Below are positions 1,383 through 31,487 of a stretch of 64,000 nt of DNA, in pieces; position 1 is the stretch's first letter, and every line of letters starts with the position of its first letter. The stretch spans positions 76,818,001-76,882,000 of the forward strand of contig OZ038379.1 in the NCBI GenBank assembly GCA_964036045.1. Direction: 5' to 3'. This DNA is from Eutreptiella sp. 'Long Island Sound 2002'. Its lineage: Eukaryota; Protista; Euglenida. The translations under genes and the position numbers were made by a program. Under the pieces are notes generated by a model. The model was not told where the DNA came from. It saw only the letters and a list, made by a program, of their open reading frames with translations, and did not search any database.

Positions 1383-1435
1383 TGTGTGTGTGTGTGTGTG
1401 TGTGTGTGCTTTCTGTGTGTTTGTGTGTGTGTGTG
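1383..1435. repeat. (TG)n microsatellite, interrupted
   Basis: Pure TG run at 1383-1408, then interrupted TG to ~1435. Confidence 0.95.
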
Positions 1436-1849: not shown

Positions 1850-2657
1850 TACACAATCCTGACATAAGGTGTCCTGGACATTTCATTCCATGTAGCGAGC
1901 AAATGCACCGTGTGTCCTCAGTACTTTACCGCATGTCCGGAGCAAATACACCGCGTGTCTTGGGCATTTTGGTGCATGACCAGACCAGATGCACTGTGTG
2001 TCCTCAGCATTTCATGACATGGCCAAAGCAAATGAACCATGTGTCTTCAGGAATTCACTGCATATCCGGTGCAAATACACCGTGTGTCCTGAGCAATTCC
2101 TTGCATGTCCACAGCAAATACACCGTGTGTCGTGAGCAATTCACTGTACGTCCATAGCATATACACCGTGTATCAGAAGTATTTCCTTGCATGACGAGAG
2201 GAAGAACACCGTATCTTTTGAGCAATTCACTGCTTGTCCAGAGCACACACACGTTGTGTTCTGAGCAATTTAGTGCATGTCCCGAGCAAATACACCGTGT
2301 GTCTTCAGCAATTCACTAAATGTGGAGAGCAAATACGCCACTTATCCTTAGCATTTAACGTCGTCTCCAGAGCAAATACACCATGTGTCCTCAGCAATTC
2401 ATTGGATGTGCAGAGCAAATACACCGCGTGTCGTGACCAACTCACTGCGTGAGTAGAGTAAATACAGCGTGCGTCATGAGCATTTCTCTGCATGTTCAGA
2501 GCAAATACCCCGTGTGTCATAAGTACATCCGTGCATGACCAGAGGAAATACAACGTGTCTTCTTAGCAATTCACTGCATGCCGAGAGCAAATGCACTGTG
2601 TGTCCTGTGCGTCATGAGCAATTCCGTGCACCTCAAGAGCAAAGGGGTGTGTCTCCT
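1850..2657 (+). repeat. Diverged monomeric 43-bp satellite (left flank, part 1)
   Basis: Degenerate copies of AGAGCAAATACACCGTGTGTCCTGAGCAATTCACTGCATGTCC at ~43-bp spacing. Confidence 0.9.
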
Positions 2658-2662
2658 AAATA

Positions 2663-5133
2663 CTTAGGCCACGCTAACTGCCCACCCCCCTACGCACAGG
2701 CTGGGCTCCGCGGGGCCATACTGGCCCCTTGTGAGTACACCCAAAAACAGGGTATGAATTCAGCACCTAGGGGACCCCTTGCACCTGGTAGGAAAAAATG
2801 AGTATCTCTACTTATTTAGAATGCTATTCTCATGTAACCACACCACAGTTGTCAAAACACAATAAGGATGCATGCATACTGGAAAAGCAGAGGAAGAAAG
2901 AAGGTTTCTAGAATACAACAAACCTTTCCGGTGTTACACACAAATGTATTATCCACCGAGGCGATGTAGTGCAAGAACTAGGGTAGCACACACTTGGCAA
3001 AGGTTGATGCACCATGTGTGTGCCCAATAATTGTCAATTGATAGTCACTCCAATTCATGCATCATAATCCAGGTCTCTATTTGCCATTGTTGAGAACTCC
3101 GGCCGGAAATTCTTCCAACTTTACACGGATGTAAAAACCAACCGTGTATTCCGGGAAATTTCTGAACCTGGGCGAAATTTCTTCCTGCTTTAGTAAAACA
3201 CAAAAAAACAGTGCGCAAATCGCCAATAGTATCTGCACAGACATCGCAGAACGACATTGAGACGTGTAAGAGGGAAACCATAGAATACAGCAGTCAAAGC
3301 ACACACCATTGTCAATCTAGCGCCGCTTCCTCGGGCGAGGTGCCTTGGTTTGGCACACTTACCAGTAAACAGCCCACCATTTGCTTGTGGTGCCTGGTCA
3401 CCAGGCATCTCACTGTTAGCACCACCAGTGGCACCACGTCCATTCTGTGTCTGCTGGGACGGTGGGAATGGGCTGCAAACGTGCCCAACGCCTTGTTGGG
3501 TGGAGGCTTTGATCCAGGCTTGGAGCTTTGCTGTGAGGGGCTTGCTCCAGCCTGTGATTTCTTAACCTTGGCGGGTGTGCCGTCCCCCTGCTTGCCAGTT
3601 GACTTCGGGCGGGGGGGGGGTTATGGGACTCACCGTCCTCTTCCTCTGGTTGGGTAGCCTCCTCGTCTTGATCTACATACCTCCTCCCCGTACAATCTAC
3701 TGGAAACCCATCTGCAAGGTATTCACACACTCAGTCCCACTGGATTGGTGCCTCAGTGTCGCAGTTCGACACAGCGGCCCTCAGATCAGTAACACATGAC
3801 TCGGGAATAGACTTCACCTCATACAAGTATGCAACTGCAATGTTCATAGGGAACATGCTTTTGAATGGATAGGGGTGCAGAAGAATTTGGTTGCTCTGTG
3901 CAAACCATTACCCATGTACTATGCGGCTGAAACAAATCTAATGCATACAGCAAATAACAGAACACTTCAACGGGAATGGCACTCGTCAGGGTGCCTTGGC
4001 TTTGGCTTTGGTTTGGCGGCTGGTTTAAGCTGTGGTTCTGGTGCAGGGGCGTCAGCAGCAGCAGTTCCCTCACTTCCACTAACGTGCCCTTCATTGTTCA
4101 CCAGGTTTTCGGGCTGTGTACCAACATTTTAAGAGACTTCCATAGAAGACATCGCTTGAAAAGTAAGAAAACATGAGATGCAGAGTGTAAACATGGGGAT
4201 ATCTAGGTGCTCAGACAGCGATATTAACCAACTTAGTTCAAATTTGGAGAAACCAGGCTCAAAAACAGACAGTGCCGTACAACAGGGATGACACAGTGCT
4301 GAAGGCTATGAAATTGACGTTGATCGGAAAGCTGGGCGAAATTTCGCCCAGGTCTAGCAGTTTCAAATGATACCAGGCTCAAAATCATGAAAGTCTGGCG
4401 CCTGGTGGGCTTGATGGGCCCAAGTGACAGTGAGGCAAAGGGCAACATATCAGGCACAGGACAAGCAAAGAAACAACAGGAGGGGGGTTAGGGGAAGTTT
4501 CACCCAGGATCACTGATTGGTGTTTTTGACCTGTACATTTTGCAGAAGAGGCGGAGCTGGGGGAAATTTCGCCCAGGGTCATCAAGACATCAAAATATGT
4601 ACACCTCTTTTGCTATCCGGGGGGGCTGGGGGAAATTTCTCCCAGGTTTGGGACAATTGGCAAATAGAGACAGTGAATTTGAGTTTCAAAGTGTGTATGC
4701 ATGGGACAGTGAGGCAAATGGCAACATATCGGGCACAATACAAGCAAATAAACAACAGGGGGGGGGGGGCTGGGAGAAATTTCACCAAGGATCACTCATT
4801 GTTGATTTTGACCTATACATTTTGCAGAAAAGGCGGAGCTGGGGAAAATTTCGCCTAGGCTCATCAAGACATCAAAATATGTATACCTTTTTTGCTATCC
4901 GGGGGGGCTGGGGGAAATTTCGCCCAGGTTTGGGAAAATTGGCAAATAGAAAATTTGAATTTGAGTTTCAAAGTGTGTATGCATAGGACACACAATAAAT
5001 GTATAATTATTCTTCACCACCTATCACACTACATGCGACACATGGAAAACATACACACAAAAAAAAGACACATAAAAGGCGACAAACTGCCCATGTTTGG
5101 GTCGTAAGGGGCGGGTAGTTAGCGTGGCCTAAG
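2663..5133. mobile_element. Non-autonomous TIR DNA transposon, 2471 bp, superfamily unassigned, inserted in the 43-bp satellite
   Basis: Left TIR CTTAGGCCACGCTAACTGCCCACCCCCCTACG (2663-2694) matches the reverse complement of 5103-5133 (CTTAGGCCACGCTAACTACCCGCCCCTTACG); the first 17 bp are identical. AAATA flanks both ends (2658-2662 and 5134-5138). Satellite resumes on both sides. No transposase ORF seen. Confidence 0.85.
4427..4990 (+). repeat. ~280-bp tandem duplication in the right subterminal region of the 2.47-kb element
   Basis: gacagtgaggcaaa at ~4427 and ~4705; caaagtgtgtatgcat at ~4687 and ~4969. Each copy carries several CTGGGGGAAATTTCGCCCAGG-like boxes. Confidence 0.9.
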
Positions 5134-5138
5134 AAATA

Positions 5139-6214
5139 GTTCATTGCACGACGAAAGCAAACACACCTTGTGTCGTGAGCAATTCCCTGCATGACGAGGG
5201 CCAATGCATCGGGTGTCCTAGACAATTCATTTGATGTATAGAAGAAATGTACCGTGTGTCCTGAGCTATTAATTGCATGCCCACAGCAAATAGATGCTGT
5301 GTGCCGAGCGTTTCGCTACATGATCAGAGCAAATAACCCGTGTGTCCTGAGCATTTCATTACACGATGAGAGAAAATAAACCTCGTGTCCTCAGCAATTT
5401 ACTACATGACCACAGCCAATACATCGGATGTCCTCATCATTTTACAGCATGTTGAGAGCAAATATTTCCAATGTTCATAGCGATTCAGTCCATTTCCAGA
5501 GCAAATACAACCATTGTCCCGAGCAATTCAATGCATGTCCATAGCCAATACACCGTGTGTCCTAAGCGTTTCAATGCATCTCCACAACCAACACAACGTG
5601 TGTATTGAGCAATTCACCGCATGTCCAAAGCAAATACACCGTGGGTCCTCTGTCTCGTGAGCAATTCACCACATTTCTTGAGCAAATACACGGCGTGTCT
5701 TGAGCAATTCACTGCAGGACCAAAGCAAACGTATTGTGTGTCCTGGGCAATTCAGCGCATGTGCAGAGCAAACAAATCCCGTGTAATGAGCATTTCACTG
5801 CATGTTCAAAGCAAATACACGGTGCATAATGAGGAGTGCAGTACATGTCCAAAGCAAATATGCCGCATGTCCGAAGTGATTCACGACATGTCCAGAGCCA
5901 ATACACCGTGTGTCAGAAGTGTCTCCTTGCATGAGCAGAGGAAAAACACCGCGTGTGCTGAGCAATTCACTGCCCGCCCACAGCAAACACACCTTGTGTC
6001 TTAAGCATTTGCCTGCATGTCAGGAACAAATACACCGTGTGTCTTGAGCAATTCACTGTAGGTGGAGAGAAAATACACCGTGTGTCCTTAGCAGTTCACG
6101 TCATCTCTACGGCAAATACACCATGTGTCCCAAGCAATTCATTGGATGTGCAAAGCAAATACACCGTGTGTCTTGACCACCTCACTGCTAGACTAGAGCG
6201 AATACACCATGCGT
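5139..6214 (+). repeat. Diverged monomeric 43-bp satellite (left flank, part 2)
   Basis: Same 43-bp family, without the 982-bp periodicity. Confidence 0.9.
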
Positions 6215-9200
6215 CATGAGCATTTCACTGCATGTCTTACGCAAATACACCGTGTGTCATGAGCCATTCGCTGCGTACCAAGAGCAATGCACCGTGTGTA
6301 CAGAGTGGTCCGCTGCTTGACCAAGGCAAACACAATGTGTGTCTCGAGGAATTCAGTGCACGACAAGAGCAAATACACCGTCGTCTTGAGGGATTCGCTG
6401 CACAACCACACAAAAATACACCGTGTGTCCCGAGCAAAGAACCGCATGTCTAGAGGAAGATAGCCGTGTGTCATGAGCAATCCACTACCTGACCGGAGCA
6501 ACTCAATGCACCACCAGAGCAAATACATCGTATGCTTTGAGCAATGCACTCCATCTCAAGAGCAAATACATCACGTGTCCAGACCATTTCACTGCATGTC
6601 TAGAGCAAATACACCGTGTGTCCTGACCAATGCACTGCATGTCCAGAGTAAATACAACGTGTCTCCTTAGGAATTAGCCGCATGTCTAGAGGGAATACAC
6701 CCTGTGCCCCTTTGTCTTGAGCCATTCACTGCATCTCCAAAGGGAATACACCATGTGTCCTCAGCATTCCCTTGCATGACCAGAGGGAATACACTCTGTC
6801 TTCTTAGCAATTTCCTGCATGTCTAGACCGAATACACCGTGTTTCTTGTGGCTCGTGAGCAATTCATTTCATGCCTAAACCAAATATGCCGTGTGTCTTG
6901 AGAAACTTATTGCATGACCACACCAAACACACTGTGTGTTTTGAGCAATTCACAGCATGTCGAGAGCACATACACCGTGTGTCTTGACCATTTCCTTGCA
7001 GGTAGAGAGTAAATACACCGCGTGGCCTGAGAGTTTCACAGCATGTCTAGAGCAAATACACGGTGAGTCTTGCGCGGTTCATTGCATGTGGAGCACAAAT
7101 ACACCGCGCGTCTAGAGTGTTTCTCGGCATGTTCACAGCAAACACATCGCGTGTCTTGAGCAACTCGCTGCGTTACAAGAGCAAATGCATGTTCGTCAAG
7201 AGCATTTCACTGCATGTCGAGAGCAAATACACCGTGTGTCATGAGCCATTCGCTGTGTACCAAGAGCAATGCACCGTGTGTACAGAGTGGTCCGCTGCGT
7301 GGCCAAGGCAAACACAATGTTTGTCTCGAGCAATTCAGTGCACGACAAGAGCAAATACACCGTCGTCTTGAGGGATTCACTACACAACCAAACAAAAATA
7401 CACCCTGTGTCCCGAGCAAAGAGCTGCATGTCTAGAGGAAGATAGCCGTGTGTCATGAGCAATCCACTACCTGACCGGAGCAATTCAATGCACCACCAGA
7501 GCAAATACATTGTATGCTTTGAGCAATGCACTCCATCTCAAGAGCAAATACATCACGTGTCCAGACCATTTCACTGCATGTCTAGAGCAAATACACCGTG
7601 TGTCCTGACCAATGCACTGCCTGTCCAGAGTAAATACAACGTGTCTGCTTAGGAATTCGCCGCATGTCTAGAGGGAATACACCCTGTGCCCCTGTGTCTT
7701 GAGCCATTCACTGCATCTCCAAAGCGAATACACCATGTGTCCTCAGCATTCCCTTGCATGACCAGAGGGAATACACTCTGTCTTCTTAGCAATTTCCTGC
7801 ATGTCTAGACGGAATACACCGTGTTTCTTGTGGCTCGTGAGCAATTCAGTTCATGCCTAGACCAAAGATGCCGTGTGTCTTGAGAAACTTATTGCATGAC
7901 CACACCAAACACACTGTGTGTTTTGAGCAATTCACAGCATGTCGAGAGCACATACACCGTGTGTCTTGACCATTTCCTTGCAGGTAGAGAGCAAATACAC
8001 CGCGTGGCCTTAGAGTTTCACAGCATGTCTAGAGCAAATACACGGTGAGTCTTGCGCGGTTCATTGCATGTGGAGCACAAATACACCGCGCGTCTAGAGT
8101 GTTTCTCGGCATGTTCACAGCAAACACATTGCGTGTCTTGAGCAACTCGCTGCGTTACAAGAGCAAATGCACGTTCGTCAAGAGCATTTCACTGCATGTC
8201 GAGAGCAAATACACCGTGTGTCATGAGCCATTCGCTGCGTACCAAGAGCAATGCACCGTGTGTACAGAGTGGTCCGCTGCGTGACCAAGGCAAACACAAT
8301 GTGTGTCTCGAGGAATTCAGTGCACGACAAGAGCAAATACACCGTCGTCTTGAGGGATTCGCTGCACAACCAAATAAAAATACACCGTGTGTCCCGAGCA
8401 AAGAACCGCATGTCTAGAGGAAGATAGCCGTGTGTCATGAGCAATCCACTACCTGACCGGAGCAATTCAATGCACCACCAGAGCAAATACATCGTATGCT
8501 TTGAGCAATGCACTCCATCTCAAGAGCAAATACATCACGTGTCAAGACCATTTCACTGCATGTCTAGAGCAAATACACCGTGTGTCCTGACCAATGCACT
8601 GCCTGTCCAGAGTAAATACAACGTGTCTGCTTAGGAATTCGCCGCATGTCTAGAGGGAATACACCCTGTGCCCCTGTGTCTTGAGCCATTCACTGCATCT
8701 CCAAAGCGAATACACCATGTGTCCTCGGCATTCCCTTGCATGACCAGAGGGAATACACTCTGTCTTCTTAGCAATTTCCTGCATGTCTAGACCGAATACA
8801 CCGTGTTTTTTGTGGCTCCTGAGCAATGCAGTTCATGCCTAGACCAAATATGCCGTGTGTCTTGAGAAACTTATTGCATGACCACAGCAAACACATTGTG
8901 TGTTTTGAGCAATTCACAGCATGTCGAGAGCACATACACCGTGTGTCTTGACCATTTCCTTGCAGGTAGAGAGCAAATACACCGCGTGGCCTGAGAGTTT
9001 CACAGCATGTCTGGAGCAAATACACGGTGAGTCTTGCGCGGTTCATTGCATGTGGACCACAAATACACCGCGCGTCTAGAGTGTTTCTCGGCATGTTCAC
9101 AGCAAACACATCGCGTGTCTTGAGCAACTCGCTGCGTTACAAGAGCAAATGCACGTTCGTCAAGAGCATTTCACTGCATGTCGAGAGCAAATACACCGTG

Positions 9201-12200
9201 TGTCATGAGCCATTCGCTGCGTACCAAGAGCAATGCACCGTGTGTACAGAGTGGTCCACTGCGTGACCAAGGCAAACACACTGTGTGTCTCGAGGAATTC
9301 AGTGCACGACAAGAGCAAATACACCGTCGTCTTGAGGGATTCGCTGCACAACCACATAAAAATACACCGTGTGTCCCGAGCAAAGAACCGCATGTCTAGA
9401 GGAAGATAGCCGTGTGTCATGAGCAATCCACTACCTGACCGGAGCAATCCAATGCACCACCAGAGCAAATACATCGTATGCTTTGAGCAATGCACTCCAT
9501 CTCAAGAGCAAATACATCACGTGTCCAGACCATTTCACTGCATGTCTAGAGCAAATACACCGTGTGTCCTGACCAATGCACTGCCTGTCCAGAGTAAATA
9601 CAACGTGTCTCCTTAGGTATTCGCCGCATGTCTAGAGGGAATACACCCTGTGCCCCTGTGTCTTGAGCCATTCACTGCATCTCCAAAGCGAATACACCAT
9701 GTGTCCTCAGCATTCCCTTGCATGACCAGAGGGAATACACTCTGTCTTCTTAGCAGTTTCCTGCATGTCTAGACCGAATACACCGTGTTTCTTGTGGCTC
9801 GTGAGCAATTCAGTTCATGCCTAGACCAAATATGCCGTGTGTCTTGAGAAACTTATTGCATGACCACAGCAAACACACTGTGTGTTTTGAGCAATTCACA
9901 GCATGTCGAGAGCACATACACCATGTGTCTTGACCATTTCCTTGCAGGTAGAGAGCAAATACACCGCGTGGCCTGAGGGTTTCACAGCATGTCTAGAGCA
10001 AATACACGGTGAGTCTTGCGCGGTTCATTGCATGTGGAGCACAAACACACCGCGCGTCTAGAGTGTTTCTCGGCATGTTCACAGCAAACACATCGCGTGT
10101 CTTGAGCAACTCGCTGCGTTACAAGAGCAAATGCACGTTCGTCAAGAGCATTTCACTGCATGTCTTACGCAAATACACCGTGTGTCATGAGCCATTCGCT
10201 GCGTACCAAGAGCAATGCACCGTGTGTACAGAGTGGTCCGCTGCGTGACCAAGGCAAACACAATGTGTGTCTCGAGGAATTCAGTGCACGACAAGAGCAA
10301 ATACACCGTCGTCTTGAGGGATTCGCTGCATAACCACACAAAAATACACTGTGTGTCCCGAGCAAAGAACCGCACGTCTGGAGGAAGATAGCCGTGTGTC
10401 ATGAGCAATCCACTACCTGACCGGAGCAATCCAATGCACCACCAGAGCAAATACACTGTATGCTTTGAGCAATGCACTCCATCTCAAGAGCAAATACATC
10501 ACGTGTCCAGACCATTTCACTGCATGTCTAGAGCAAATACACCGTGTGTCCTGACCAATGCACTGCCTGTCTAGAGTAAATACAACGTGTCTCCTTAGGA
10601 ATTCGCCGCATGTCTAGAGGGAATACACCCTGTGCCCCTGTGTCTTGAGCCATTCACTGCATCTCCAAAGCGAATACACCATGTGTCCTCAGCATTCCCT
10701 TGCATGACCAGAGGGAATACACTCTGTCTTCTTAGCAATTTCCTGCATGTCTAGACCGAATACACCGTGTTTCTTGTGGCTCCTGAGCAATGCAGTTCAT
10801 GCCTAGACCAAATATGCTGTGTGTCTTGAGAAACTTATTGCATGACCACAGCAAATACACTGTGTGTTTTGAGCAATTCACAGCATGTCGAGAGCACATA
10901 CACCATGTGTCTTGACCATTTCCTTGCAGGTAGAGAGCAAATACACCGCCCGGCCTGAGAGTTTCATAGCATGTCTAGAGCAAATACACGGTGAGTCTTG
11001 CGCGGTTCATTGCATGTGGAGCACAAATACACCGCGCGTCTAGAGTGTTTCTCGGCATGTTCACAGCAAACACATCGCGTGTCTTGAGCAACTCGCTGCG
11101 TTACAAGAGCAAATGCATGTTCGTCAAGAGCATTTCACTGCATGTCGAGAGCAAATACACCGTGTGTCATGAGCCATTCGCTGCGTACCAAGAGCAATGC
11201 ACCGTGTGTACAGAGTGGTCCGCTGCGTGACCAAGGCAAACACAATGTGTGTCTCGAGCAATTCAGTGCACGACAAGAGCAAATACACCGTCGTCTTGAG
11301 GGATTCGCTGCACAACCACATAAAAATACACCGTGTGTCCCGAGCAAAGAACCGCATGTCTAGAGGAAGATAGCCGTGTGTCATGAGCAATCCACTACCT
11401 GACCGGAGCAATTCAATGCACCACCAGAGCAAATACATCGTATGCTTTGAGCAATGCACTCCATCTCAAGAGCAAATACATCACGTGTCCAGACCATTTC
11501 ACTGCATGTCTAGAGCAAATACACCGTGTGTCCTGACCAATGCACTGCCTGTCCAGAGTAAATACAACGTGTCTCCTTAGGAATTCGCCGCATGTCTAGA
11601 GGGAATACACCCTGTGCCCCTGTGTCTTGAGCCATTCACTGCATCTCCAAAGCGAATACACCATGTGTCCTCAGCATTCCCTTGCATGACCAGAGGGAAT
11701 ACACTCTGTCTTCTTAGCAGTTTCCTGCATGTCTAGACCGAATACACCGTGTTTCTTGTGGCTCGTGAGCAATTCAGTTCATGCCTAGACCAAATATGCC
11801 GTGTGTCTTGAGAAACTTATTGCATGACCACAGCAAACACACTGCGTGTTTTGAGCAATTCACAGCATGTCGAGAGCACATACACCATGTGTCTTGACCA
11901 TTTCCTTGCAGGTAGAGAGCAAATACACCGCGTGGCCTGAGGGTTTCACAGCATGTCTAGAGCAAATACACGGTGAGTCTTGCGCGGTTCATTGCATGTG
12001 GAGCACAAATACACCGCGCGTCTAGAGTGTTTCTCGGCATGTTCACAGCAAACACATCGCGTGTCTTGAGCAACTCGCTGCGTTACAAGAGCAAATGCAC
12101 GTTCGTCAAGAGCATTTCACTGCATGTCTTACGCAAATACACCGTGTGTCATGAGCCATTCGCTGCGTACCAAGAGCAATGCACCGTGTGTACAGAGTGG

Positions 12201-18200: not shown

Positions 18201-21200
18201 ACACCGTGTGTCCCGAGCAAAGAACCGCATGTCTAGAGGAAGATAGCCGTGTGTCATGAGCAATCCACTACCTGACCGGAGCAATTCAATGCACCACCAG
18301 AGCAAATACATCGTATGCTTTGAGCAATGCACTCCATCTCAAGAGCAAATACGTGTCCAGACCATTTCACTGCATGTCTAGAGCAAATACACCGTATGTC
18401 CTGACCAATGCACTGCCTATCCAGAGTAAATACAACGTGTCTCCTTAGGAATTCGCCGCATGTCTAGAGGGAATACACCCTGTGCCCCTTTGTCTTGAGC
18501 CATTCACTGCATCTCCAAAGCGAATACACCATGTGTCCTCAGCATTCCCTTGCATGACCAGAGGGAATACACTCTGTCTTCTTAGCAATTTCCTGCATGT
18601 CTAGACCGAATACACCGTGTTTCTTGTGGCTCGTGAGCAATTCAGTTCATGCCTAGACCAAATATGCCGTGTGTCTTGAGAAACTTATTGCATGAGCACA
18701 GCAAACACACTGTGTGTTTTGAGCAATTCACAGCATGTCGAGAGCACATACACCATGTGTCTTGACCATTTCCTTGCAGGTAGAGAGCAAATACACCGCC
18801 CGGCCTGAGAGTTTCACAGCATGTCTAGAGCAAATAGACAGTGAGTCTTGCGCGGTTCATTGCATGTGGAGCACAAATACACCGCGCGTCTAGAGTGTTT
18901 CTCGGCATGTTCACAGCAAACACATCGCGTGTCTTGAGCAACTCGCTGCGTTACAAGAGCAAATGCACGTTCGTCAAGAGCATTTCACTGCATGTCGAGA
19001 GCAAATACACCGTGTGTCATGAGCCATTCGCTGCGTACCAAGAGCAATGCACCGTGTGTACAGAGTGGTCCGCTGCGTGACCAGTGCAACCACAATGTGT
19101 GTCTCGAGGAATTCAGTGCACGACAAGAGCAAATACACCGTCGTCTTGAGGGATTCGCTGCACAACCACATAAAAATACACCGTGTGTCCCGAGCAAAGA
19201 ACCGCATGTCTAGAGGAAGATAGCCGTGTGTCATGAGCAATCCACTACCTGACCGGAGCAATTCAATGCACCACCAGAGCAAATACATCGTATGCTTTGA
19301 GCAATGCACTCCATCTCAAGAGCAAATACATCACGTGTCCAGACCATTTCACTGCATGTCTAGAGCAAATACACCGTGTGTCCTGACCAATGCACTTCCT
19401 GTCCAGAGTAAATACAACGTGTCTCCTTAGGAATTCGCCGCATGTCTAGAGGGAATACACCCTGTGCCCCTGTGTCTTGAGCCATTCACTGCATCTCCAA
19501 AGCGAATACACCATGTGTCCTCAGCATTCCCTTGCATGACCAGAGGGAATACACTCTGTCTTCTTAGCAATTTCCTGCATGTCTAGACCGAATACACCGT
19601 GTTTCTTGTGGCTCGTGAGCAATTCATTTCATGCCTAGACCAAAAATGCCGTGTGTCTTGAGAAACTTATTGCATGACCACACCAAACACACTGTGTGTT
19701 TTGAGTAATTCACAGCATGTCGAGAGCACATACACCGTGTGTCTTGACCATTTCCTTGCAGGTAGAGAGCAAATACACCGCGTGGCCTGAGAGTTTCACA
19801 GCATGTCTAGAGCAAATACACGGTGAGTCTTGCGCGGTTCATTGCATGTGGAGCACAAATACACCGCGCGTCTAGAGTGTTTCTCGGCATGTTCACAGCA
19901 AACACATCGCGTGTCTTGAGCAACTCGCTGCGTTACAAGAGCAAATGCACGTTCGTCAAGAGCATTTCACTGCATGTCGAGAGCAAATACACCGTGTGTC
20001 ATGAGCCATTCGCTGCGTACCAAGAGCAATGCACCGTGTGTACAGAGTGGTCCACTGCGTGACCAAGGCAAACACAATGTGTGTCTCGAGGAATTCAGTG
20101 CACGACAAGAGCACATACACCGTCGTCTTGAGGGATTCGCTGCACAACCACATAAAAATACACCGTGTGTCCCGAGCAAAGAACCGCATGTCTAGAGGAA
20201 GATAGCCGTGTGTCATGAGCAATCCACTACCTGACCGGAGCAATTCAATGCACCACCAGAGCAAATACATCGTATGCTTTGAGCAATGCACTCCATCTCA
20301 AGAGCAAATACGTGTCCAGACCATTTCACTGCATGTCTAGAGCAAATACACCGTATGTCCTGACCAATGCACTGCCTGTCCAGAGTAAATACAACGTGTC
20401 TCCTTAGGAATTCGCCGCATGTCTAGAGGGAATACACCCTGTGCCCCTTTGTCTTGAGCCATTCACTGCATCTCCAAAGCGAATACACCATGTGTCCTCA
20501 GCATTCCCTTGCATGACCAGAGGGAATACACTCTGTCTTCTTAGCAATTTCCTGCATGTCTAGACCGAATACACCGTGTTTCTTGTGGCTCGTGAGCAAT
20601 TCAGTTCATGCCTAGACCAAATATGCCGTGTGTCTTGAGAAACTTATTGCATGACCACAGCAAACAAACTGTGTGTTTTGAGCAATTCACAGCATGTCGA
20701 GAGCACATACACCATGTGTCTTGACCATTTCCTTGCAGGTAGAGAGCAAATACACCGCCCGGCCTGAGAGTTTCACAGCATGTCTAGAGCAAATACACGG
20801 TGAGTCTTGCGCGGTTCATTGCATGTGGAGCACAAATACACCGCGCGTCTAGAGTGTTTCTCGGCATGTTCACAGCAAACACATCGCGTGTCTTGAGCAA
20901 CTCGCTGCGTTACAAGAGCAAATGCACGTTCGTCAAGAGCATTTCACTGCATGTCGAGAGCAAATACACCGTGTGTCATGAGCCATTCGCTGCGTACCAA
21001 GAGCAATGCACCGCGTGTACAGAGTGGTCCGCTGCGTGACCAAGGCAAACACAATGTGTGTCTCGAGCAATTCAGTGCACAACAAGAGCAAATACACCGT
21101 CGTCTTGAGGGATTCGCTGCACAACCACATAAAAATACACCGTGTGTCCCGAGCAAAGAACCGCATGTCTAGAGGAAGATAGCCGTGTGTCATGAGCAAT

Positions 21201-24200
21201 CCACTACCTGACCGGAGCAATTCAATGCACCACCAGAGCAAATACATCGTATGCTTTGAGCAATGCACTCCATCTCAAGAGCAAATACATCACGTGTCCA
21301 GACCATTTCACTGCATGTCTAGAGCAAATACACCGTGTGTCCTGACCAATGCACTTCCTGTCCAGAGTAAATACAACGTGTCTCCTTAGGAATTCGCCGC
21401 ATGTCTAGAGGGAATACACCCTGTGCCCCTGTGTCTTGAGCCATTCACTGCATCTCCAAAGCGAATACACCATGTGTCCTCAGCATTCCCTTGCATGACC
21501 AGAGGGAATACACTCTGTCTTCTTAGCAATTTCCTGCATGTCTAGACCGAATACACCGTGTTTCTTGTGGCTCGTGAGCAATTCATTTCATGCCTAGACC
21601 AAACATGCCGTGTGTCTTGAGAAACTTATTGCATGACCACACCAAACACACTGTGTGTTTTGAGTAATTCACAGCATGTCGAGAGCACATACACCGTGTG
21701 TCTTGACCATTTCCTTGCAGGTAGAGAGCAAATACACCGCGTGGCCTGAGAGTTTCACAGCATGTCTAGAGCAAATACACGGTGAGTCTTGCGCGGTTCA
21801 TTGCATGTGGAGCACAAATACACCGCGCGTCTAGAGTGTTTCTCGGCATGTTCACAGCAAACACATCGCGTGTCTTGAGCAACTCGCTGCGTTACAAGAG
21901 CAAATGCACGTTCGTCAAGAGCATTTCACTGCATGTCGAGAGCAAATACACCGTGTGTCATGAGCCATTCGCTGCGTACCAAGAGCAATGCACCGTGTGT
22001 ACAGAGTGGTCCACTGCGTGACCAAGGCAAACACAATGTGTGTCTCGAGGAATTCAGTGCACGACAAGAGCACATACACCGTCGTCTTGAGGGATTCGCT
22101 GCACAACCACATAAAAATACACCGTGTGTCCCGAGCAAAGAACCGCATGTCTAGAGGAAGATAGCCGTGTGTCATGAGCAATCCACTACCTGACCGGAGC
22201 AATTCAATGCACCACCAGAGCAAATACATCGTATGCTTTGAGCAATGCACTCCATCTCAAGAGCAAATACGTGTCCAGACCATTTCACTGCATGTCTAGA
22301 GCAAATACACCGTATGTCCTGACCAATGCACTGCCTATCCAGAGTAAATACAACGTGTCTCCTTAGGAATTCGCCGCATGTCTAGAGGGAATACACCCTG
22401 TGCCCCTTTGTCTTGAGCCATTCACTGCATCTCCAAAGCGAATACACCATGTGTCCTCAGCATTCCCTTGCATGACCAGAGGGAATACACTCTGTCTTCT
22501 TAGCAATTTCCTGCATGTCTAGACCGAATACACCGTGTTTCTTGTGGCTCGTGAGCAATTCAGTTCATGCCTAGACCAAATATGCCGTGTGTCTTGAGAA
22601 ACTTATTGCATGACCACAGCAAACAAACTGTGTGTTTTGAGCAATTCACAGCATGTCGAGAGCACATACACCATGTGTCTTGACCATTTCCTTGCAGGTA
22701 GAGAGCAAATACACCGCCCGGCCTGAGAGTTTCACAGCATGTCTAGAGCAAATAGACAGTGAGTCTTGCGCGGTTCATTGCATGTGGAGCACAAATACAC
22801 CGCGCGTCTAGAGTGTTTCTCGGCATGTTCACGGCAAACACATCGCGTGTCTTGAGCAACTCGCTGCGTTACAAGAGCAAATGCACGTTCGTCAAGAGCA
22901 TTTCACTGCATGTCGAGAGCAAATACACCGTGTGTCATGAGCCATTCGCTGCGTACCAAGAGCAATGCACCGCGTGTACAGAGTGGTCCGCTGCGTGACC
23001 AAGGCAAACACAATGTGTGTCTCGAGCAATTCAGTGCACAACAAGAGCAAATACACCGTCGTCTTGAGGGATTCGCTGCACAACCACATAAAAATACACC
23101 GTGTGTCCCGAGCAAAGAACCGCATGTCTAGAGGAAGATAGCCGTGTGTCATGAGCAATCCACTACCTGACCGGAGCAATTCAATGCACCACCAGAGCAA
23201 ATACATCGTATGCTTTGAGCAATGCACTCCATCTCAAGAGCAAATACATCACGTGTCCAGACCATTTCACTGCATGTCTAGAGCAAATACACCGTGTGTC
23301 TTGACCAATGCACTGCCTGTCCAGAGTAAATACGACGTGTCTCCTTAGGAATTCGCCGCATGTCTAGAGGGAATACACCCTGTGCCCCTGTGTCTTGACC
23401 CATTCACTGCATCTCCAAAGCGAATACACCATGTGTCCTCAACATTCCCTTGCATGACCAGAGGGAATACACTCTGTCTTCTTAGCAATTTCCTGCATGT
23501 CTAGACCGAATACACCGTGTTTCTTGTGGCTCGTGAGCAATTCATTTCATGCCTAGACCAAACATGCCGTGTGTCTTGAGAAACTTATTGCATGACCACA
23601 GCAAACACACTATGTGTTTTGAGCAATTCACAGCATGTCGAGAGCACATACACCGTGTGTCTTGACCATTTCCTTGCAGGTAGAGAGCAAATACACCGCG
23701 TGGCCTGAGAGTTTCACAGCATGTCTAGAGCAAATACACGGTGAGTCTTGCGCGGTTCATTGCATGTGGAGCACAAATACACCGCGCGTCTAGAGTGTTT
23801 CTCGGCATGTTCACAGCAAACACATCGCGTGTCTTGAGCAACTCGCTGCGTTACAAGAGCAAATGCACGTTCGTCAAGAGCATTTCACTGCATGTCGAGA
23901 GCAAATACACCGTGTGTCATGAGCCATTCGCTGCGTACCAAGAGCAATGCACCGTGTGTACAGAGTGGTCCGCTGCGTGACCAAGGCAAACAGAATGTGT
24001 ACTCGAGCAATTCAATGCACGACAAGAGCAAATACACCGTCGTCTTGAGGGATTCGCTGCAGAACCACACAAAAATACACCGTGTGTCCCGAGCAAAGAA
24101 CCGCATGTCTAGAGGAAGATAGCCGTGTGTCATGAGCAATCCACTACCTAACCGGAGCAATTCAATGCACCACCAGAGCAAATACATCGTATGCTTTGAG

Positions 24201-27200
24201 CAATGCACTCCATCTCAAGAGCAAATACATCACGTGTCCAGACCATTTCACTGCATGTCTAGAGCAAATACACCGTGTGTCCTGACCAATGCACTGCCTG
24301 TCCAGGGTAAATACAACGTGTCTCCTTAGGAATTCGCCGCATGTCTAGAGGGAATACACCCTGTGCCCCTGTGTCTTGAGCCATTCACTGCATCTCCAAA
24401 GCGAATACACCATGTGTCCTCAGCATTCCCTTGCATGACCAGAGGGAATACACTCTGTCTTCTTAGCAATTTCCTGCATGTCTAGACCGAATACACCGTG
24501 TTTCTTGTGGCTCGTGAGCAATTCAGTTCATGCCTAGACCAAATATGCCGTGTGTCTTGAGAAACTTATTGCATGACCACAGCAAACACACTGTGTGTTT
24601 TGAGCAATTCACAGCATGTCGAGAGCACATACACCGTGTGTCTTGACCATTTCCTTGCAGGTAGAGAGCAAATACACCGCCCGGCCTGAGAGTTTCACAG
24701 CATGTCTAGAGCAAATACACGGTGAGTCTTGCGCGGTTCATTGCATGTGGAGCACAAATACACCGCGCGTCTAGAGTGTTTCTCGGCATGTTCACAGCAA
24801 ACACATCGCGTGTCTTGAGCAACTCGCTGCGTTACAAGAGCAAATGCACGTTCGTGAAGAGCATTTCACTGCATGTCGAGAGCAAATACACCGTGTGTCA
24901 TGAGCCATTCGCTGCGTACCAAGAGCAATGCACCGTGTGTACAGAGTGGTCCGCTGCGTGACCAAGGCAAACACAATGTGTGTCTCGAGCAATTCAGTGC
25001 ACGACAAGAGCAAATACACCGTCGTCTTGAGGATTCGCTGCACAACCACACAAAAATACACCGTGTGTCCCGAGCAAAGAACCGCACGTCTAGAGGAAGA
25101 TAGCCGTGTGTCATGAGCAATCCACTACCTGACCGGAGCAATTCAATGCACCACCAGAGCAAATACATCGTATGCTTTGAGCAATGCACTCCATCTCAAG
25201 AGCAAATACATCACGTGTCCAGACCGTTTCACTGCATGTCTAGAGCAAATACACCGTGTGTGCTGACCAATGCACTGCCCGTCCAGAGTAAATACAACGT
25301 GTCTCCTTAGGAATTCGCCGCATGTCTAGAGGGAATACACCCTGTGCCCCTGTGTCTTGAGCCATTCACTGCATCTCCAAAGCGAATACACCATGTGTCC
25401 TCAGCATTCCCTTGCATGACCAGAGGGAATACACTCTGTCTTCTTAGCAATTTCCTGCATGTCTAGACCGAATACACCGTGTTTCTTGTGGCTCGTGAGC
25501 AATTCAGTTCATGCCTAGACCAAATATGCCGTGTGTCTTGAGAAACTTATTGCATGAGCACAGCAAACACACTGTGTGTTTTGAGCAATTCACAGCATGT
25601 CGAGAGCACATACACCATGTGTCTTGACCATTTCCTTGCAGGTAGAGAGCAAATACACCGCCCGGCCTGAGAGTTTCACAGCATGTCTAGAGCAAATACA
25701 CGGTGAGTCTTGCGCGGTTCATTGCATGTGGAGCACAAATACACCGCGCGTCTAGAGTGTTTCTCGGCATGTTCACAGCAAACACATCGCGTGTCTTGAG
25801 CAACTCGCTGCGTTACAAGAGCAAATGCACGTTCGTCAAGAGCATTTCACTGCATGTGGAGAGCAAATACACCGTGTGTCATGAGCCATTCGCTGCGTAC
25901 CAAGAGCAATGCACCGTGTGTACAGAGTGGTCCGCTGCGTGACCAAGGCAAACACAATGTGTGTCTCGAGCAATTCAGTGCACGACAAGAGCAAATACAC
26001 CGTCGTCTTGAGGATTCGCTGCACAACCACATAAAAATACACCGTGTGTCCCGAGCAAAGAACCGCATGTCTAGAGGAAGATAGCCGTGTGTCATGAGCA
26101 ATCCACTACCTGACCGGAGCAATTCAATGCACCACCAGAGCAAATACATCGTATGCTTTGAGCAATGCACTCCATCTCAAGAGCAAATACATCACGTGTC
26201 CAGACCATTTCACTGCATGTCTAGAGCAAATACACCGTGTGTCCTGACCAATGCACGGCCCGTCCAGAGTAAATACAACGTGTCTCCTTCGGAATTCACC
26301 GCATGTCTAGAGGGAATACACCCTGTGCCCCTGTGTCTTGAGCCATTCACTGCATCTCCAAAGCGAATACACCATGTGCCCTCAGCATTCCCTTGCATGA
26401 CCAGAGGGAATACACTCTGTCTTCTTAGCAATTTCCTGCATGTCTAGACCGAATACACCGTGTTTCTTGTGGCTCGTGAGCAATTCAGTTCATGCCTAGA
26501 CCAAATATGCCGTGTGTCTTGAGAAACTTATTGCATGAGCACAGCAAACACACTGTGTGTTTTGAGCAATTCACAGCATGTCGAGAGCACATACACCGTG
26601 TGTCTTGACCATTTCCTTGCAGGTAGAGAGCAAATACACCGCCCGGCCTGAGAGTTTCACAGCATGTCTAGAGCAAATACACGGTGAGTCTTGCGCGGTT
26701 CATTGCATGTGGAGCACAAATACACCGCGCGTCTAGAGTGTTTCTCGGCATGTTCACAGCAAACACATCGCGTGTCTTGAGCAACTCGCTGCGTTACAAG
26801 AGCAAATGCACGTTCGTCAAGAGCATTTCACTGCATGTCGAGAGCAAATACACCGTGTGTCATGAGCCATTCGCTGCGTACCAAGAGCAATGCACCGTGT
26901 GTACAGAGTGGTCCACTGCGTGACCAAGGCAAACACAATGTGTGTCTCGAGCAATTCAGTGCACGACAAGAGCAAATACACCGTCGTCTTGAGGGATTCG
27001 CTGCACAACCACATAAAAATACACCGTGTGTCCCGAGCAAAGAACCGCATGTCTAGAGGAAGATAGCCGTGTGTCATGAGCAATCCACTACCTGACAAGG
27101 GCAATTCAATGCACCACCAGAGCAAATACATCGTATGCTTTGAGCAATGCACTCCATCTCAAGAGCAAATACATCACGTGTCCAGACCATTTCACTGCAT

Positions 27201-30200
27201 GTCTAGAGCAAATACACCGTGTGTCCTGACCAATGCACTGCCTGTCCAGAGTAAATACAACGTGTCTCCTCAGGAATTCGCCGCATGTCTAGAGGGAATA
27301 CACCCTGTGCCCCTCCGTCTTGAGCCATTCACTGCATCTCCAAAGCGAATACACCATGTGTCCTCAGCATTCCCTTGCATGACCAGAGGGAATACGCTCT
27401 GTCTTCTTAGCAATTTCCTGCATGTCTAGACCGAATACACCGTGTTTCTTGTGGCTCGTGAGCAATTCATTTCATGCCTAGACCAAACATGCCGTGTGTC
27501 TTGAGAAACTTATTGCATGACCACAGCAAACACACTGTGTGTTTTGAGCAATTCACAGCATGTCAAGAGCACATACACCGTGTGTCTTGACCATTTCCTT
27601 GCAGGTAGAGAGCAAATACACCGCGTGGCCTGAGAGTTTCACAGCATGTCTAGAGCAAATACACGGTGAGTCTTGCGCGGTTCATTGCATGTGGAGCACA
27701 AATACACGGCGCGTCTAGAGTGTTTCTCGGCATGTTCACAGCAAACACATCGCGTGTCTTGAGCAACTCGCTGCGTTACAAGAGCAAATGCACGTTCGTC
27801 AAGAGCATTTCACTGCATGTCGAGAGCAAATACACCGTGTGTCATGAGCCATTCGCTGCGTACCAAGAGCAATGCACCGTGTGTACAGAGTGGTCCACTG
27901 CGTGACCAAGGCAAACACAATGTGTGTCTCGAGCAATTCACTGCACGACAAGAGCAAATACACCGTCGTCTTGAGGGATTCGCTGCACAACCACATAAAA
28001 ATACACCGTGTGTCCCGAGCAAAGAACCGCATGTCTAGAGGAAGATAGCCGTGTGTCATGAGCAATCCACTACCTGACCGGAGCAATTCAATGCACCACC
28101 AGAGCAAATACATCGTATGCTTTGAGCAATGCACTCCATCTCAAGAGCAAATACATCACGTGTCCAGACCATTTCACTGCATGTCTAGAGCAAATACACC
28201 GTGTGTCCTGACCAATGCACTGCCTGTCCAGAGTAAATACAACGTGTTTCCTTAGGAATTCGCCGCATGTCTAGAGGGAATACACCCTGTGCCCCTGTGT
28301 CTTGAGCCATTCACTGCATCTCCAAAGCGAATACACCATGTGTCCTCAGCATTCCCTTGCATGACCAGAGGGAATACACTCTGTCTTCTTAGCAATTTCC
28401 TGCATGTCTAGACCGAATACACCGTGTTTCTTGTGGCTCGTGAGCAATTCAGTTCATGCCTAGACCAAATATGCCGTGTGTCTTGAGAAACTTATTGCAT
28501 GACCACAGCAAACACACTGTGTGTTTTGAGCAATTCACAGCATGTCGAGAGCACATACACCGTGTGTCTTGACCATTTCCTTGCAGGTAGAGAGCAAATA
28601 CACCGCGTGGCCTGAGAGTTTCACGGCATGTCTAGAGCAAATACACGGTGAGTCTTGCGCGGTTCATTGCATGTGGAGCACAAATACACTGTGCGTCTAG
28701 AGTGTTTCTCGGCATGTTCACAGCAAACACATCGCGTGTCTTGAGCAACTCGCTGCGTTACAAGAGCAAATGCACGTTCGTCAAGAGCATTTCACTGCAT
28801 GTGGAGAACAAATACACCGTGTGTCATGAGCCATTCGCTGCGTACCAAGAGCAATGCACCGTGTGTACAGAGTGGTCCGCTGCGTGACCAAGGCAAACAC
28901 AATGTGTGTCTCGAGGAATTCAGTGCACGACAAGAGCAAATACACCGCCGTCTTGAGGGATTCGCTGCACAACCACATAAAAATACACCGTGTGTCCCGA
29001 GCAAAGAACCGCATGTCTAGAGGAAGATAGCCGTGTGTCATGAGCAATCCACTACCTGACCGGAGCAATTCAATGCACCACCAGAGCAAATACATCGTAT
29101 GCTTTGAGCAATGCACTCCATCTCAAGAGCAAATACATCACGTGTCCAGACCATTTCACTGCATGTCTAGAGCAAATACACCGTGTGTCCTGACCAATGC
29201 ACTGCCCGTCCAGAGTAAATACAACGTGTCTCCTTAGGAATTCGCCGCATGTCTAGAGGGAATACACCCTGTGCCCCTGTGTCTTGAGCCATTCACTGCA
29301 TCTCCAAAGCGAATACACCATGTGTCCTCAGCATTCCCTTGCATGACCAGAGGGAATACACTCTGTCTTCTTAGCAATTTCCTGCATGTCTAGACCGAAA
29401 ACACCGTGTTTCTTGTGGCTCCTGAGCAATTCAGTTCATGCCTAGACCAAAGATGCCGTGTGTCTTGAGAAACTTATTGCATGACCACAGCAAACAAACT
29501 GTGTGTTTTGAGCAATTCACAGCATGTCGAGAGCACATACACCATGTGTCTTGACCATTTCCTTGCAGGTAGACAGCAAATACACTGCGTGGCCTGAGAG
29601 TTTCATAGCATGTCTAGAGCAAATACACGGTGAGTCTTGCGCGGTTCATTGCATGTGGAGCACAAATACACCGCGTGTCTAGAGTGTTTCTCGGCATGTT
29701 CACAGCAAACACATCGCGTGTCTTGAGCAACTCGCTGCGTTACAAGAGCAAATGCACGTTCGTCAAGAGCATTTCACTGCATGTGGAGAGCAAATACACC
29801 GTGTGTCATGAGCCATTCGCTGCGTACCAAGAGCAATGCACCGTGTGTACAGAGTGGTCCACTGCGTGACCAAGGCAAACACAATGTGTGTATCGAGCAA
29901 TTCAGTGCACGACAAGAGCAAATACACCGTCATCTTGAGGGATTGGCTGCACAACCACATAAAAATACACCGTGTGTCCCGAGCAAAGTACCGCATGTCT
30001 ACAGGAAGATAGCCGTGTGTCATGAGCAATCCACCACCTGACCGGAGCAATTCAATGCACCACCAGAGCAAATACATCGTATGCTTTGAGCAATGCACTC
30101 CATCTCAAGAGCAAATACATCACGTGTCGAGACCATTTCACTGCATGTCTAGAGCAAATACACCGTGTGTCCTGACCAATGCACTACCTGTCCAGAGTAA

Positions 30201-30785
30201 ATACAACGTGTCTCCTTAGGAATTCGCCGCATGTCTAGAGGGAATACACCGTGTGCCCCTGTGTCTTGAGCCATTCACTGCATCTCCAAAGCGAATACAC
30301 CATGTGTCCTCAGCATTCCCTTGCATGACCAGAGGGAATACACTCTGTCTTCTTAGCAATTTCCTGCATGTCTAGACCGAATACACCGTGTTTCTTGTGG
30401 CTCGTGAGCAATTCAGTTCATGCCTAGACCAAATATGCCGTGTGTCTTGAGAAACTTATTGCATGACCACAACAAACACACTGTGTGTTTTGAGCAATTC
30501 ACAGCATGTCGAGAGCACATACACCGTGTGTCTTGACCATTTCCTTGCAGGTAGAGAGCAAATACACTGCCCGGCCTGAGAGTTTCATAGCATGTCTAGC
30601 GCAAATACACGGTGAGTCTTGCGCGGTTCATTGCATGTGGAGCACAAATACACCGCGCGTCTAGAGTGTTTCTCGGCATGTTCACAGCAAACACATCGCG
30701 TGTCTTGAGCAACTCGCTACGTTACAAGAGCAAATGCACGTTCGTCAAGAGCATTTCACTGTATGTCGAGAGCAAATACACCATG
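6215..30785 (+). repeat. Higher-order satellite array: 25 copies of a 982-bp HOR (22 monomers of ~43 bp plus one 21-bp half monomer)
   Basis: Marker ORF starts at 7063, 8045, 9027 ... 30612 are spaced 982 bp apart (some 981 or 977). In unit 8035-9016 the monomer spacings are 43 x18, 42 x2, 21, 51 and 52, which sum to 982. HOR copies differ by only scattered substitutions, while monomers within a unit are strongly diverged. Confidence 0.97.
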
Positions 30786-31487
30786 TGTGTTGAGCGATTC
30801 ACTGCGTGGCAAGAACAATACACCATGTTTCCTCTGCCATCGATGTGGTGATTTGCTGAGGACAGACCGTGTATTTCTTGTTAACATGCAGAGACTTGCT
30901 TGGGCCATATAGTGTATCTGCTCTCATCGTGCAATGGGCCCCTCAAGATCGAGGTGTATTTGCTCTAGGCGTGCACTCAAGTGCTGAATACACAAAGCAT
31001 GTTTGCCTTGGTCACGCAATGAACCGCTCAACACACGCGGCGTATTTGCTCTGGTCATGCAGCCGATTCAAATATACCCTGTGTGTTCAGCGATTTGGTG
31101 CATGTCAAGAGAAAGTACACCGTGTGTCCAGAGCAATTCACTTCATGACCTCATCAAATACTCCGTGTGTCTTGAGGGATTCACTCCATGAGCACGGCAA
31201 ATACACCGTGTGTCCTCAGCAATTCACTGCAGAACTAGAGCAAATACACAATGTGCCTTGACCATTTCATTGCATGACCCGAGTAAATACACCGTGTGAC
31301 CTGAGCTCCTCACTGCACGTCCACGACAAATGCACCGTGTGTTGTGATCATTTCACTGCATGACCAAAGTAAATACACCGTGTGTCCTAAGCATTTCACG
31401 GCATCTCCAAAGCAAATACACCGTGTGTTCTAAGCGATGCAGTGCATGACCAGAGCAAATATACCGTGTGTCATGAGCGTTTCACCG
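30786..31487. repeat. Diverged monomeric 43-bp satellite (right flank) with an inverted block at ~30840-31062
   Basis: gtgtatttgctct (reverse complement of agagcaaatacac) occurs within 30840-31062; forward monomers resume at ~31069. Confidence 0.85.

What the first reader, a model, noticed from the sequence alone, without database searches (positions are those of the whole stretch)
1850..31487. Alpha-satellite-like architecture: homogeneous HOR core with monomeric flanks, a candidate centromere or pericentromere
Seen: 25 near-identical 982-bp HORs made of strongly diverged 43-bp monomers, bounded on both sides by diverged non-HOR monomers. The array starts (~6215) and ends (~30785) at nearly the same register, as expected from tandem amplification of one segment. 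Established: primate alpha-satellite centromeres have this layered layout. Inference: a recently amplified array that may be centromeric, built on an unusually short monomer.
Basis: partly seen in the sequence, partly recalled or inferred. Interest (0 to 1): 0.75.

Follow-up and report, generated by a model that had tools for sequence, protein, structure and literature searches.

The report
Retroposon-born satellite with one-locus higher-order repeat
The 25-copy, 982-base higher-order repeat is real, but it is a one-off local blow-up of a short tandem repeat carried inside a jumping gene of a Euglena-type alga, so it is most likely an ordinary transposon-derived satellite and not a centromere.

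Summary
Observation confirmed. Window 6215-30785 holds 25.0 head-to-tail copies of a 982-bp unit. The 24 full units differ pairwise by 2.0% on average. Each unit is 22 monomers of about 43 bp that are only 67% alike. The array starts and ends in the same register. It is flanked by equally diverged non-HOR monomers.

The centromere reading is not supported by sequence:
- A HOR-specific 29-mer occurs 24 times in the 2.28-Gb assembly, all of them here.
- The 43-bp family exists elsewhere only as one 4.2-kb monomeric array on contig C1 and a few tracts of 3-14 monomers.
- The array is not AT-rich, has no dyad symmetry and has no nucleosome-length period.

The 43-bp tract is an internal part of a retroposon. 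Copies on C8 and C4 carry 3-4 monomers between a 100-bp 3' end with a (CAAAC)n tail and target-site duplications of 16 and 10 bp. The window's array runs straight into the same element's 5' part (31488-32467).

Best reading: a retroposon minisatellite expanded to about 630 monomers and aged. One 982-bp segment was then amplified by unequal exchange, which is still active as 2-unit duplications 0.1-0.3% apart.

The neighbouring arrays are also transposon-borne. The host is a euglenid, not human. cenH3 mapping would settle the residual centromere possibility.

The parts
1093..1861 (+). End of a very high-copy dispersed element. It abuts the left edge of the 43-bp array and travels with 72/82-bp satellites.
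   Evidence: more than 1000 first-look candidates; about 40 scored copies at 77-83% identity ending at window 1855-1861; the 72-bp satellite lies next to copies of it elsewhere.
1869..2662 (.). Left monomeric flank, part 1: about 18 diverged 43-bp monomers with no HOR.
2663..5133 (.). TIR DNA transposon inserted into one monomer. TIRs are 26 bp and 92% complementary; the target-site duplication is 5 bp, AAATA.
   Evidence: Removing the element and one TSD copy restores a 42-bp monomer.
5134..6214 (.). Left monomeric flank, part 2: about 25 monomers, 63-84% identical in phase to the HOR consensus.
6215..30785 (.). HOR core: 25.0 units of 982 bp (22 monomers each), 97-99.9% alike. A three-fold 1,959-bp two-unit super-repeat lies at 17317-23193.
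30786..30833 (.). Transition monomer, about 80% identical to HOR monomer 17. It is the likely partner of the first out-of-register exchange.
30848..31062 (.). Block of 5 monomers in inverted orientation.
31069..31487 (.). Right monomeric flank: about 10 forward monomers.
31488..32467 (-). 5' part of the retroposon that carries the 43-bp tract (sense strand is minus). 31517-32301 is shared with the C6, C8 and C4 copies. 32312-32466 is the 5' terminal segment shared with a family of about 9 kb.

Best explanation
The array is a transposon-derived satellite with no demonstrated cellular role.

Shown:
- A non-LTR-type retroposon of this euglenid carries a short run of 43-bp tandem repeats near its 3' end.
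- The 43-mer is itself two related halves of about 21 bp.
- The window's array is contiguous with that element's 5' part.

Inferred:
1. In the copy at this locus the run expanded, by replication slippage or unequal sister-chromatid exchange, to about 630 monomers.
2. These then diverged to about 67% identity.
3. The array picked up a DNA-transposon insertion and a 5-monomer inversion.
4. Later, one out-of-register exchange between two monomers 982 bp apart duplicated a 22-monomer segment.
5. Repeated unequal exchange among the resulting long, near-identical units amplified and homogenised it to 25 copies.
6. The process continues. Two-unit blocks in the core differ by only 0.1-0.3%, and the outermost units are the most diverged.
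7. The inversion next to the right edge probably limits spread on that side.
For: HOR anatomy.

Single-locus distribution:
- The HOR 29-mer gives 24 hits, all in the window.
- The monomer core 20-mer gives 114 hits at up to 1 mismatch, nearly all in the window and at C1:194.033-194.037 Mb.

Retroposon context:
- The C8 copy is a (GTTTG)n tail, a 100-bp end, 3 monomers and a homologue of window 31645-31752, bounded by a 16-bp TSD.
- The C4 copy is 5'-truncated inside the monomers and has a 10-bp TSD.
- The same end-to-monomer junction is seen at C1, C4 and C8.
- The same monomer-to-5'-part junction is seen at C6, C8 and the window.
- The 100-bp 3' end is shared with longer elements and with 5'-truncated copies, one with an 11-bp TSD.
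- The 3' end and the 5' segment co-occur in the same order and orientation, 2-15 kb apart, at 8 or more loci.
- One 9.4-kb copy has a 13-bp TSD.

Age order: flank monomers are as diverged as intra-HOR monomers, and the transposon insertion lies only in the flank.

The route from TE-internal repeats to satellites is documented elsewhere (PMC4079207, PMC5932611, PMC10048060).
Against: - The window copy lacks the retroposon's 3' end and tail. The array stops at the terminus of another element at 1861, so no TSD pair brackets this copy.
- No reverse-transcriptase domain was found in the roughly 1.5-1.7 kb available at each end of the long relatives.
- The window's monomers (67% alike) are more diverged than those in the dispersed copies and in the C1 array (81%). 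The satellite could therefore be the older party.
- Absence of function cannot be shown from sequence.
Confidence: 0.75

Rival explanations
1. The array, or the satellite patchwork around it, is the centromere or pericentromere of contig C2. It would be chromosome-specific, as in Trypanosoma brucei, where small chromosome-specific repeat arrays flanked by retroelements act as centromeres (my own knowledge, not checked here).
For: - Layered HOR-plus-monomeric-flank layout.
- Interstitial position at 39.7% of a 193.5-Mb contig.
- At least 84 kb that is mostly tandem repeats and transposons.
- Euglenids have putative cenH3, Ndc80 and Nuf2, so regional centromeres are expected (PMC7052976).
- I found no paper describing euglenid centromere DNA.
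Against: - Only 24.6 kb, on a 193-Mb contig.
- The HOR is absent elsewhere and the family is nearly absent.
- GC is 48.6%, like the surroundings.
- No dyad symmetry: z = +0.57 and +0.41.
- No 172-bp periodicity.
- The neighbouring 72-bp satellite is scattered at many sites per chromosome.
- The 31-bp and 605-bp neighbouring arrays were read by earlier agents as transposon-borne.
- Unchecked scan notes list many 10-55 kb arrays in this genome, including another layered one.
Confidence: 0.07
2. The direction is reversed. An old 43-bp satellite at this locus came first, and a retroposon copy sitting in or beside it picked up a few monomers, by read-through or template switching, and spread them.
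For: The window's monomers are the most diverged set: 0.63-0.70 pairwise, against 0.81 in C1. The window lacks the retroposon 3' end.
Against: - The monomers lie inside the retroposed unit, between its 5' part and its 3' end, not downstream of the tail.
- The same two junctions recur at independent loci.
- The window's array joins the element's 5' part at the same junction as the dispersed copies.
Confidence: 0.12
3. Assembly artefact: a shorter or different array mis-expanded or mis-polished by the assembler.
For: Long near-identical repeats are error-prone in assemblies. The reads are not available here.
Against: - Units carry structured variation: 138 variable columns, 60 of them shared among units.
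- A 5-bp deletion recurs in every second unit of one block.
- The outermost units are the most diverged from the unit consensus.
- There are no Ns.
Confidence: 0.03

Closest known systems
Primate alpha-satellite HOR arrays
   Same: Hierarchy of diverged monomers (here 67% alike) inside near-identical higher-order units (98%). Homogeneous core with diverged monomeric flanks, and transposon insertions only in the flank.
   Different: - The monomer is 43 bp, not 171 bp, with no nucleosome-length period.
- The array is 25 kb, not megabases.
- It occupies one locus in the genome instead of every centromere.
- It lies inside a retroposon.
- There is no kinetochore evidence.
Satellites born from tandem repeats inside transposons (Tetris in Drosophila virilis, PMC4079207; reviews PMC10048060 and PMC5932611). 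SVA VNTR expansion in hominids is a further parallel, from my own knowledge.
   Same: A short internal tandem repeat is present in dispersed copies at a few units. At one or two loci it has expanded into long arrays flanked by element sequence.
   Different: - The carrier here is a TSD-flanked retroposon with a (CAAAC)n tail, in a euglenid.
- The expansion then acquired a 22-monomer HOR.
- The element's 3' end is missing at the expanded locus.
ingi/RIME pair of trypanosomes: a non-autonomous element made of the two ends of a LINE (my own knowledge, not checked here)
   Same: The monomer-bearing element shares only about 155-260 bp of its 5' end and about 100 bp of its 3' end with a family of about 9 kb.
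   Different: - The interior is not a simple deletion; it holds its own sequence plus the 43-bp repeat.
- Reverse transcriptase in the long partner was not shown.
- No sequence homology to ingi was tested.
Euchromatic low-copy satellites with HORs (Tribolium castaneum, PMC4675708, PMC10218199)
   Same: Satellite-like arrays outside centromeres, few loci, TE association.
   Different: Different organism and monomer length. Here a single locus holds nearly all of the copies.

Membership tests
Centromeric HOR satellite (alpha-satellite type) | Near-identical higher-order units built of diverged monomers, with monomeric flanks | tested here: met
Centromeric HOR satellite (alpha-satellite type) | The family marks the centromere of many or all chromosomes, or is the dominant array of its chromosome | tested here: not met
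   the HOR 29-mer occurs only here; 114 core hits genome-wide, at two main loci. The array is 24.6 kb on a 193.5-Mb contig.
Centromeric HOR satellite (alpha-satellite type) | Monomer or sub-period near nucleosome length; AT-rich or dyad-rich sequence | tested here: not met
   no peak at 172 bp. GC 48.6%; fold z-scores +0.57 and +0.41.
Centromeric HOR satellite (alpha-satellite type) | cenH3/CENP-A occupancy and kinetochore assembly | not testable with these tools
   Needs ChIP or CUT&Tag. Putative euglenid cenH3 is reported in PMC7052976.
Transposon-derived satellite (expanded internal repeat of a retroposon) | The same repeat occurs as short tracts inside dispersed element copies, with shared junctions on both sides | tested here: met
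Transposon-derived satellite (expanded internal repeat of a retroposon) | Copies that contain the repeat show hallmarks of retroposition: tail, TSD, 5' truncation | tested here: met
   16-bp TSD on C8; 10-bp TSD on C4, truncated inside the monomers; 11-bp TSD on a 78-bp copy.
Transposon-derived satellite (expanded internal repeat of a retroposon) | The expanded array is bracketed by the element's own sequence on both sides | tested here: inconclusive
   The 5' part is present at 31488-32467. The 3' end and tail are absent; another element ends at 1861.
Transposon-derived satellite (expanded internal repeat of a retroposon) | An autonomous partner encoding reverse transcriptase | tested here: inconclusive
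   no Pfam hit in ORFs of the terminal 1.5-1.7 kb. The interior could not be fetched.
Tandem box C/D snoRNA gene array (common in this genome according to earlier notes) | Box C (RUGAUGA) and box D in each unit; Rfam or guide matches | tested here: not met
   no TGATGA on either strand of the unit; no Rfam family at gathering score.

The most novel reading that the evidence does not exclude
The 43-bp HOR, or the satellite/transposon patchwork of at least 84 kb in which it sits, is the chromosome-specific centromere of this 193-Mb euglenid chromosome. It would be built from a retroposon minisatellite and would be the first euglenid centromere sequence.
Probability: 0.06. Interest if true: 0.75.

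Novelty: new member of a known kind. Interest (0 to 1): 0.3.

Why it matters
It is a clean case showing that the alpha-satellite-like layered layout arises from local unequal exchange alone. It occurs at a single non-recurrent locus, on a 43-bp monomer that came from a retroposon. HOR architecture should therefore not be used by itself to call centromeres in newly assembled protist genomes.

It also adds a euglenid example of transposon-to-satellite conversion. It defines a retroposon pair (a long element and a short derivative sharing both ends) that was not found described in the papers searched.

If cenH3 mapped here against expectation, it would give the first centromere DNA for euglenids.

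Tried and rejected
- snoRNA gene array. Suggested by earlier notes on this genome. Rejected: no box C, no Rfam hit.
- Coding repeat. Rejected: the longest stop-free stretch is 122 aa, and neither 43 nor 982 is a multiple of 3.
- Hairpin or non-B DNA satellite. Rejected: folding is no better than shuffles.
- HDV-like ribozyme at the retroposon 5' end. No Rfam match at E up to 5.
- Pfam domains in ORFs of the window's unique part and of the retroposon relatives. None found.
- Shared unique flanks between the window array and the C1 array. None beyond the monomers. No TSD found for the C1 copy.
- A centre-to-edge divergence gradient. Only the outermost units stand out; Spearman -0.13, p = 0.56.
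- Fetching full-length elements and more of C2.
- A wider place look-up of earlier notes.
Full report
**Organism and place**

The window is C2:76,818,001-76,882,000 of a 2.28-Gb assembly with 2,317 contigs. C2 is 193.5 Mb, so the array lies at 39.7% of its length.

The 24-nt core of the Euglena gracilis spliced leader occurs 5,458 times at up to 1 mismatch, against 0 for the reversed control. The leader is quoted in PMC6242988. The host is therefore a euglenid, as earlier notes also said. It is not human, and nothing here falls under the human-contig rule.

The published E. gracilis assembly has 46 chromosomes of at most 121 Mb and 9.85% tandem repeats (PMC11252322). This is therefore a different assembly or a relative.

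**The observation**

- Self-identity at lag 982 is 0.76 across 6200-30800.
- One unit finds 24 full-length copies at 97.1-99.1% identity, plus partial end units.
- Against the unit consensus, identity rises above 90% at about 6211-6240 and falls at about 30783-30800. These are consensus positions about 680-705 and about 718-735.
- Full units differ pairwise by 2.03% on average, range 0.1-3.8%.
- A unit is 22 monomers. Twenty are 42-44 bp, two carry 8-9 bp inserts, and the last is 64 bp (one and a half monomers). They are 67% alike on average, range 48-81%.
- TRF also sees a 21-22 bp sub-period, so the 43-mer is itself two related halves.
- XhoI cuts once in each of 24 units.

**Finer anatomy**

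Forward monomers run 1869-2662, 5134-30833 and 31069-31485. Five monomers at 30848-31062 are inverted, directly after the HOR's right edge.

The gap at 2663-5133 is a DNA transposon. It has 26-bp terminal inverted repeats (92% complementary) and a 5-bp AAATA duplication. Removing it restores one monomer.

Flank monomers are as diverged from one another (0.63-0.70) as monomers within a unit (0.66). The base array is therefore old and the 982-bp amplification is young.

Inside the core there are very recent two-unit duplications:
- u04/u06 differ by 0.7%.
- u05/u07 differ by 0.3%.
- u12/u14/u16 differ by 0.1-0.2%.
- u13/u15/u17 share a 5-bp deletion, giving a three-fold 1,959-bp super-repeat.

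The outermost units are the most diverged from consensus (1.9%, 1.8% and 2.8%). There is no smooth gradient.

**Distribution in the genome**

A 29-mer specific to one HOR monomer occurs 24 times at up to 2 mismatches, all in this window.

The 20-mer monomer core occurs 114 times at up to 1 mismatch. Nearly all hits are in the window or at C1:194.033-194.037 Mb.

The C1 array is 98 monomers, 81% alike, with no HOR. It lies near the end of a 201-Mb contig.

Elsewhere there are only tracts of about 3-14 monomers, on C4, C6, C8 and C15.

**What the 43-bp tract belongs to**

The short tracts sit in a fixed context.
- On one side is a roughly 100-bp segment preceded by (GTTTG)n. The junction with the monomers is identical at C1, C4 and C8.
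- On the other side is sequence homologous to window 31517-32301. This is seen at C8, C6 and C4:32.48 Mb.
- The C8 copy (tail, 100 bp, 3 monomers, then the homologue of window 31645-31752) is bounded by a 16-bp target-site duplication.
- The C4 copy stops inside the monomers and has a 10-bp duplication.

The 100-bp segment with its tail is also the end of longer elements, and of short 5'-truncated copies; one 78-bp copy has an 11-bp duplication.

That 3' end and the segment matching window 32312-32466 co-occur in the same order and orientation, 2-15 kb apart, at 8 or more loci. One pair, 9.4 kb apart, is bracketed by a 13-bp duplication.

A tail, duplications of variable length and 5' truncation are the marks of target-primed reverse transcription (established knowledge). 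I conclude the following:
- The 43-bp repeat is an internal minisatellite of a retroposon whose sense strand is the window's minus strand.
- This retroposon shares only its two ends with a long family of about 9 kb.

Reverse transcriptase itself was not shown. The terminal ORFs have no Pfam match, and the interior could not be fetched.

The window's array is continuous with the element's 5' part (31488-32467). On the left it lacks the 3' end. There it meets the terminus of another very abundant element (1093-1861) that travels with the 72/82-bp satellites.

**Surroundings**

- The 10 kb upstream are a 72-bp satellite with a 216-bp higher order. That family is scattered at many places on every large contig: 521 hits, for example 11 separate places on C2 among those listed.
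- Downstream lie an 11.3-kb 31-bp array and 605-bp arrays. Earlier agents read these as the expanded internal repeat of a hAT-like transposon and as Helitron-derived arrays. I confirmed only the 31-bp array's existence.
- The neighbourhood is therefore a patchwork of transposon-borne repeats.

**Tests bearing on a centromere role**

- The array is not AT-rich: GC 48.6%, CpG o/e 0.76, like its surroundings.
- It shows no excess single-strand folding (z = +0.57 and +0.41).
- It has no 172-bp period.
- It holds no Rfam family, no box C and no long ORF.

Euglenids have putative cenH3, Ndc80 and Nuf2 (PMC7052976), so regional centromeres should exist. I found no paper describing their DNA.

Nothing positive points to this array. 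Its uniqueness and small size argue against a conventional satellite centromere. A chromosome-specific centromere cannot be excluded without chromatin data.

**Mechanism proposed**

Shown:
- The HOR structure, and the identical register at both ends.
- The old flanks.
- The single-locus distribution.
- The retroposon context.

Inferred:
1. The minisatellite expanded and then aged.
2. One exchange between monomers 982 bp apart created the unit. The 30786-30833 monomer, about 80% identical to HOR monomer 17, is the likely partner.
3. Repeated unequal sister-chromatid exchange between long identical units amplified and homogenised it.
4. The adjacent inversion acts as a barrier on the right.

**Novelty**

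Transposon-internal repeats growing into satellites are well documented (PMC4079207, PMC5932611, PMC10048060). So are HORs outside centromeres (PMC4675708, PMC10218199). This is a new, clear member of that kind, in a euglenid, and a caution against reading HOR layout as centromere evidence.

Noticed in passing
window 2663-5133: A 2.47-kb TIR transposon with 26-bp TIRs and a 5-bp AAATA duplication. It carries at least six copies of a private palindrome of the form CTGGGCGAAATTTCGCCCAG and an internal 282-bp x2 tandem repeat (4426-4990). This resembles the 'private recognition motif' transposons noted elsewhere in this genome.
   Followed up: partly
window 30848-31062: Five 43-bp monomers in inverted orientation, within about 60 bp of the HOR's right boundary. 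They may be a barrier to unequal exchange, or a trace of the event that started amplification.
   Followed up: partly
L011 (C2:76,808,001-76,818,000) and window 62-1009: At least 10 kb of a 72-bp satellite with a 216-bp (3-mer) higher order, followed by related 82-bp and G-rich 22-bp repeats. The 72-bp family is scattered at many sites per chromosome (521 pattern hits). It lies next to copies of the 770-bp element that ends at window 1861, so all of these may be one composite transposon.
   Followed up: partly
L052 and L035 (C4:144,617,500-144,626,900): A retrotransposon copy of about 9.4 kb bracketed by a 13-bp duplication (CCCGCCCTCGCCC), with a (CAAAC)n tail. There are no Pfam hits in its first 1.7 kb or last 1.5 kb. 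It shares about 155-260 bp of 5' end and about 100 bp of 3' end with the short monomer-bearing element, an ingi/RIME-like pairing.
   Followed up: partly
L014 774-4982 (C1:194,032,774-194,036,982): The only other sizeable 43-bp array: 98 monomers, 81% alike, no HOR. It starts at the retroposon 3' end with a very short tail, has no recognisable TSD, and lies about 7 Mb from the end of a 201-Mb contig.
   Followed up: partly
whole genome G000: The 24-nt spliced-leader core occurs 5,458 times, spread along the chromosomes on both strands. This suggests many dispersed SL-RNA genes or retroposed SL-bearing copies.
   Followed up: no
window 32706-45471: The 31-bp array has CpG o/e of 0.16, against 0.68-0.76 in the neighbouring stretches from 1862 on (0.56 in 1-1861). 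This is probably just because the repeat unit has no CpG.
   Followed up: no
L012 (C2:76,882,001-76,892,000): More small arrays just downstream of the window, with periods of 78/157/201, 105/210, 215 and 284 bp. One of them is 99% identical over 3 copies.
   Followed up: no
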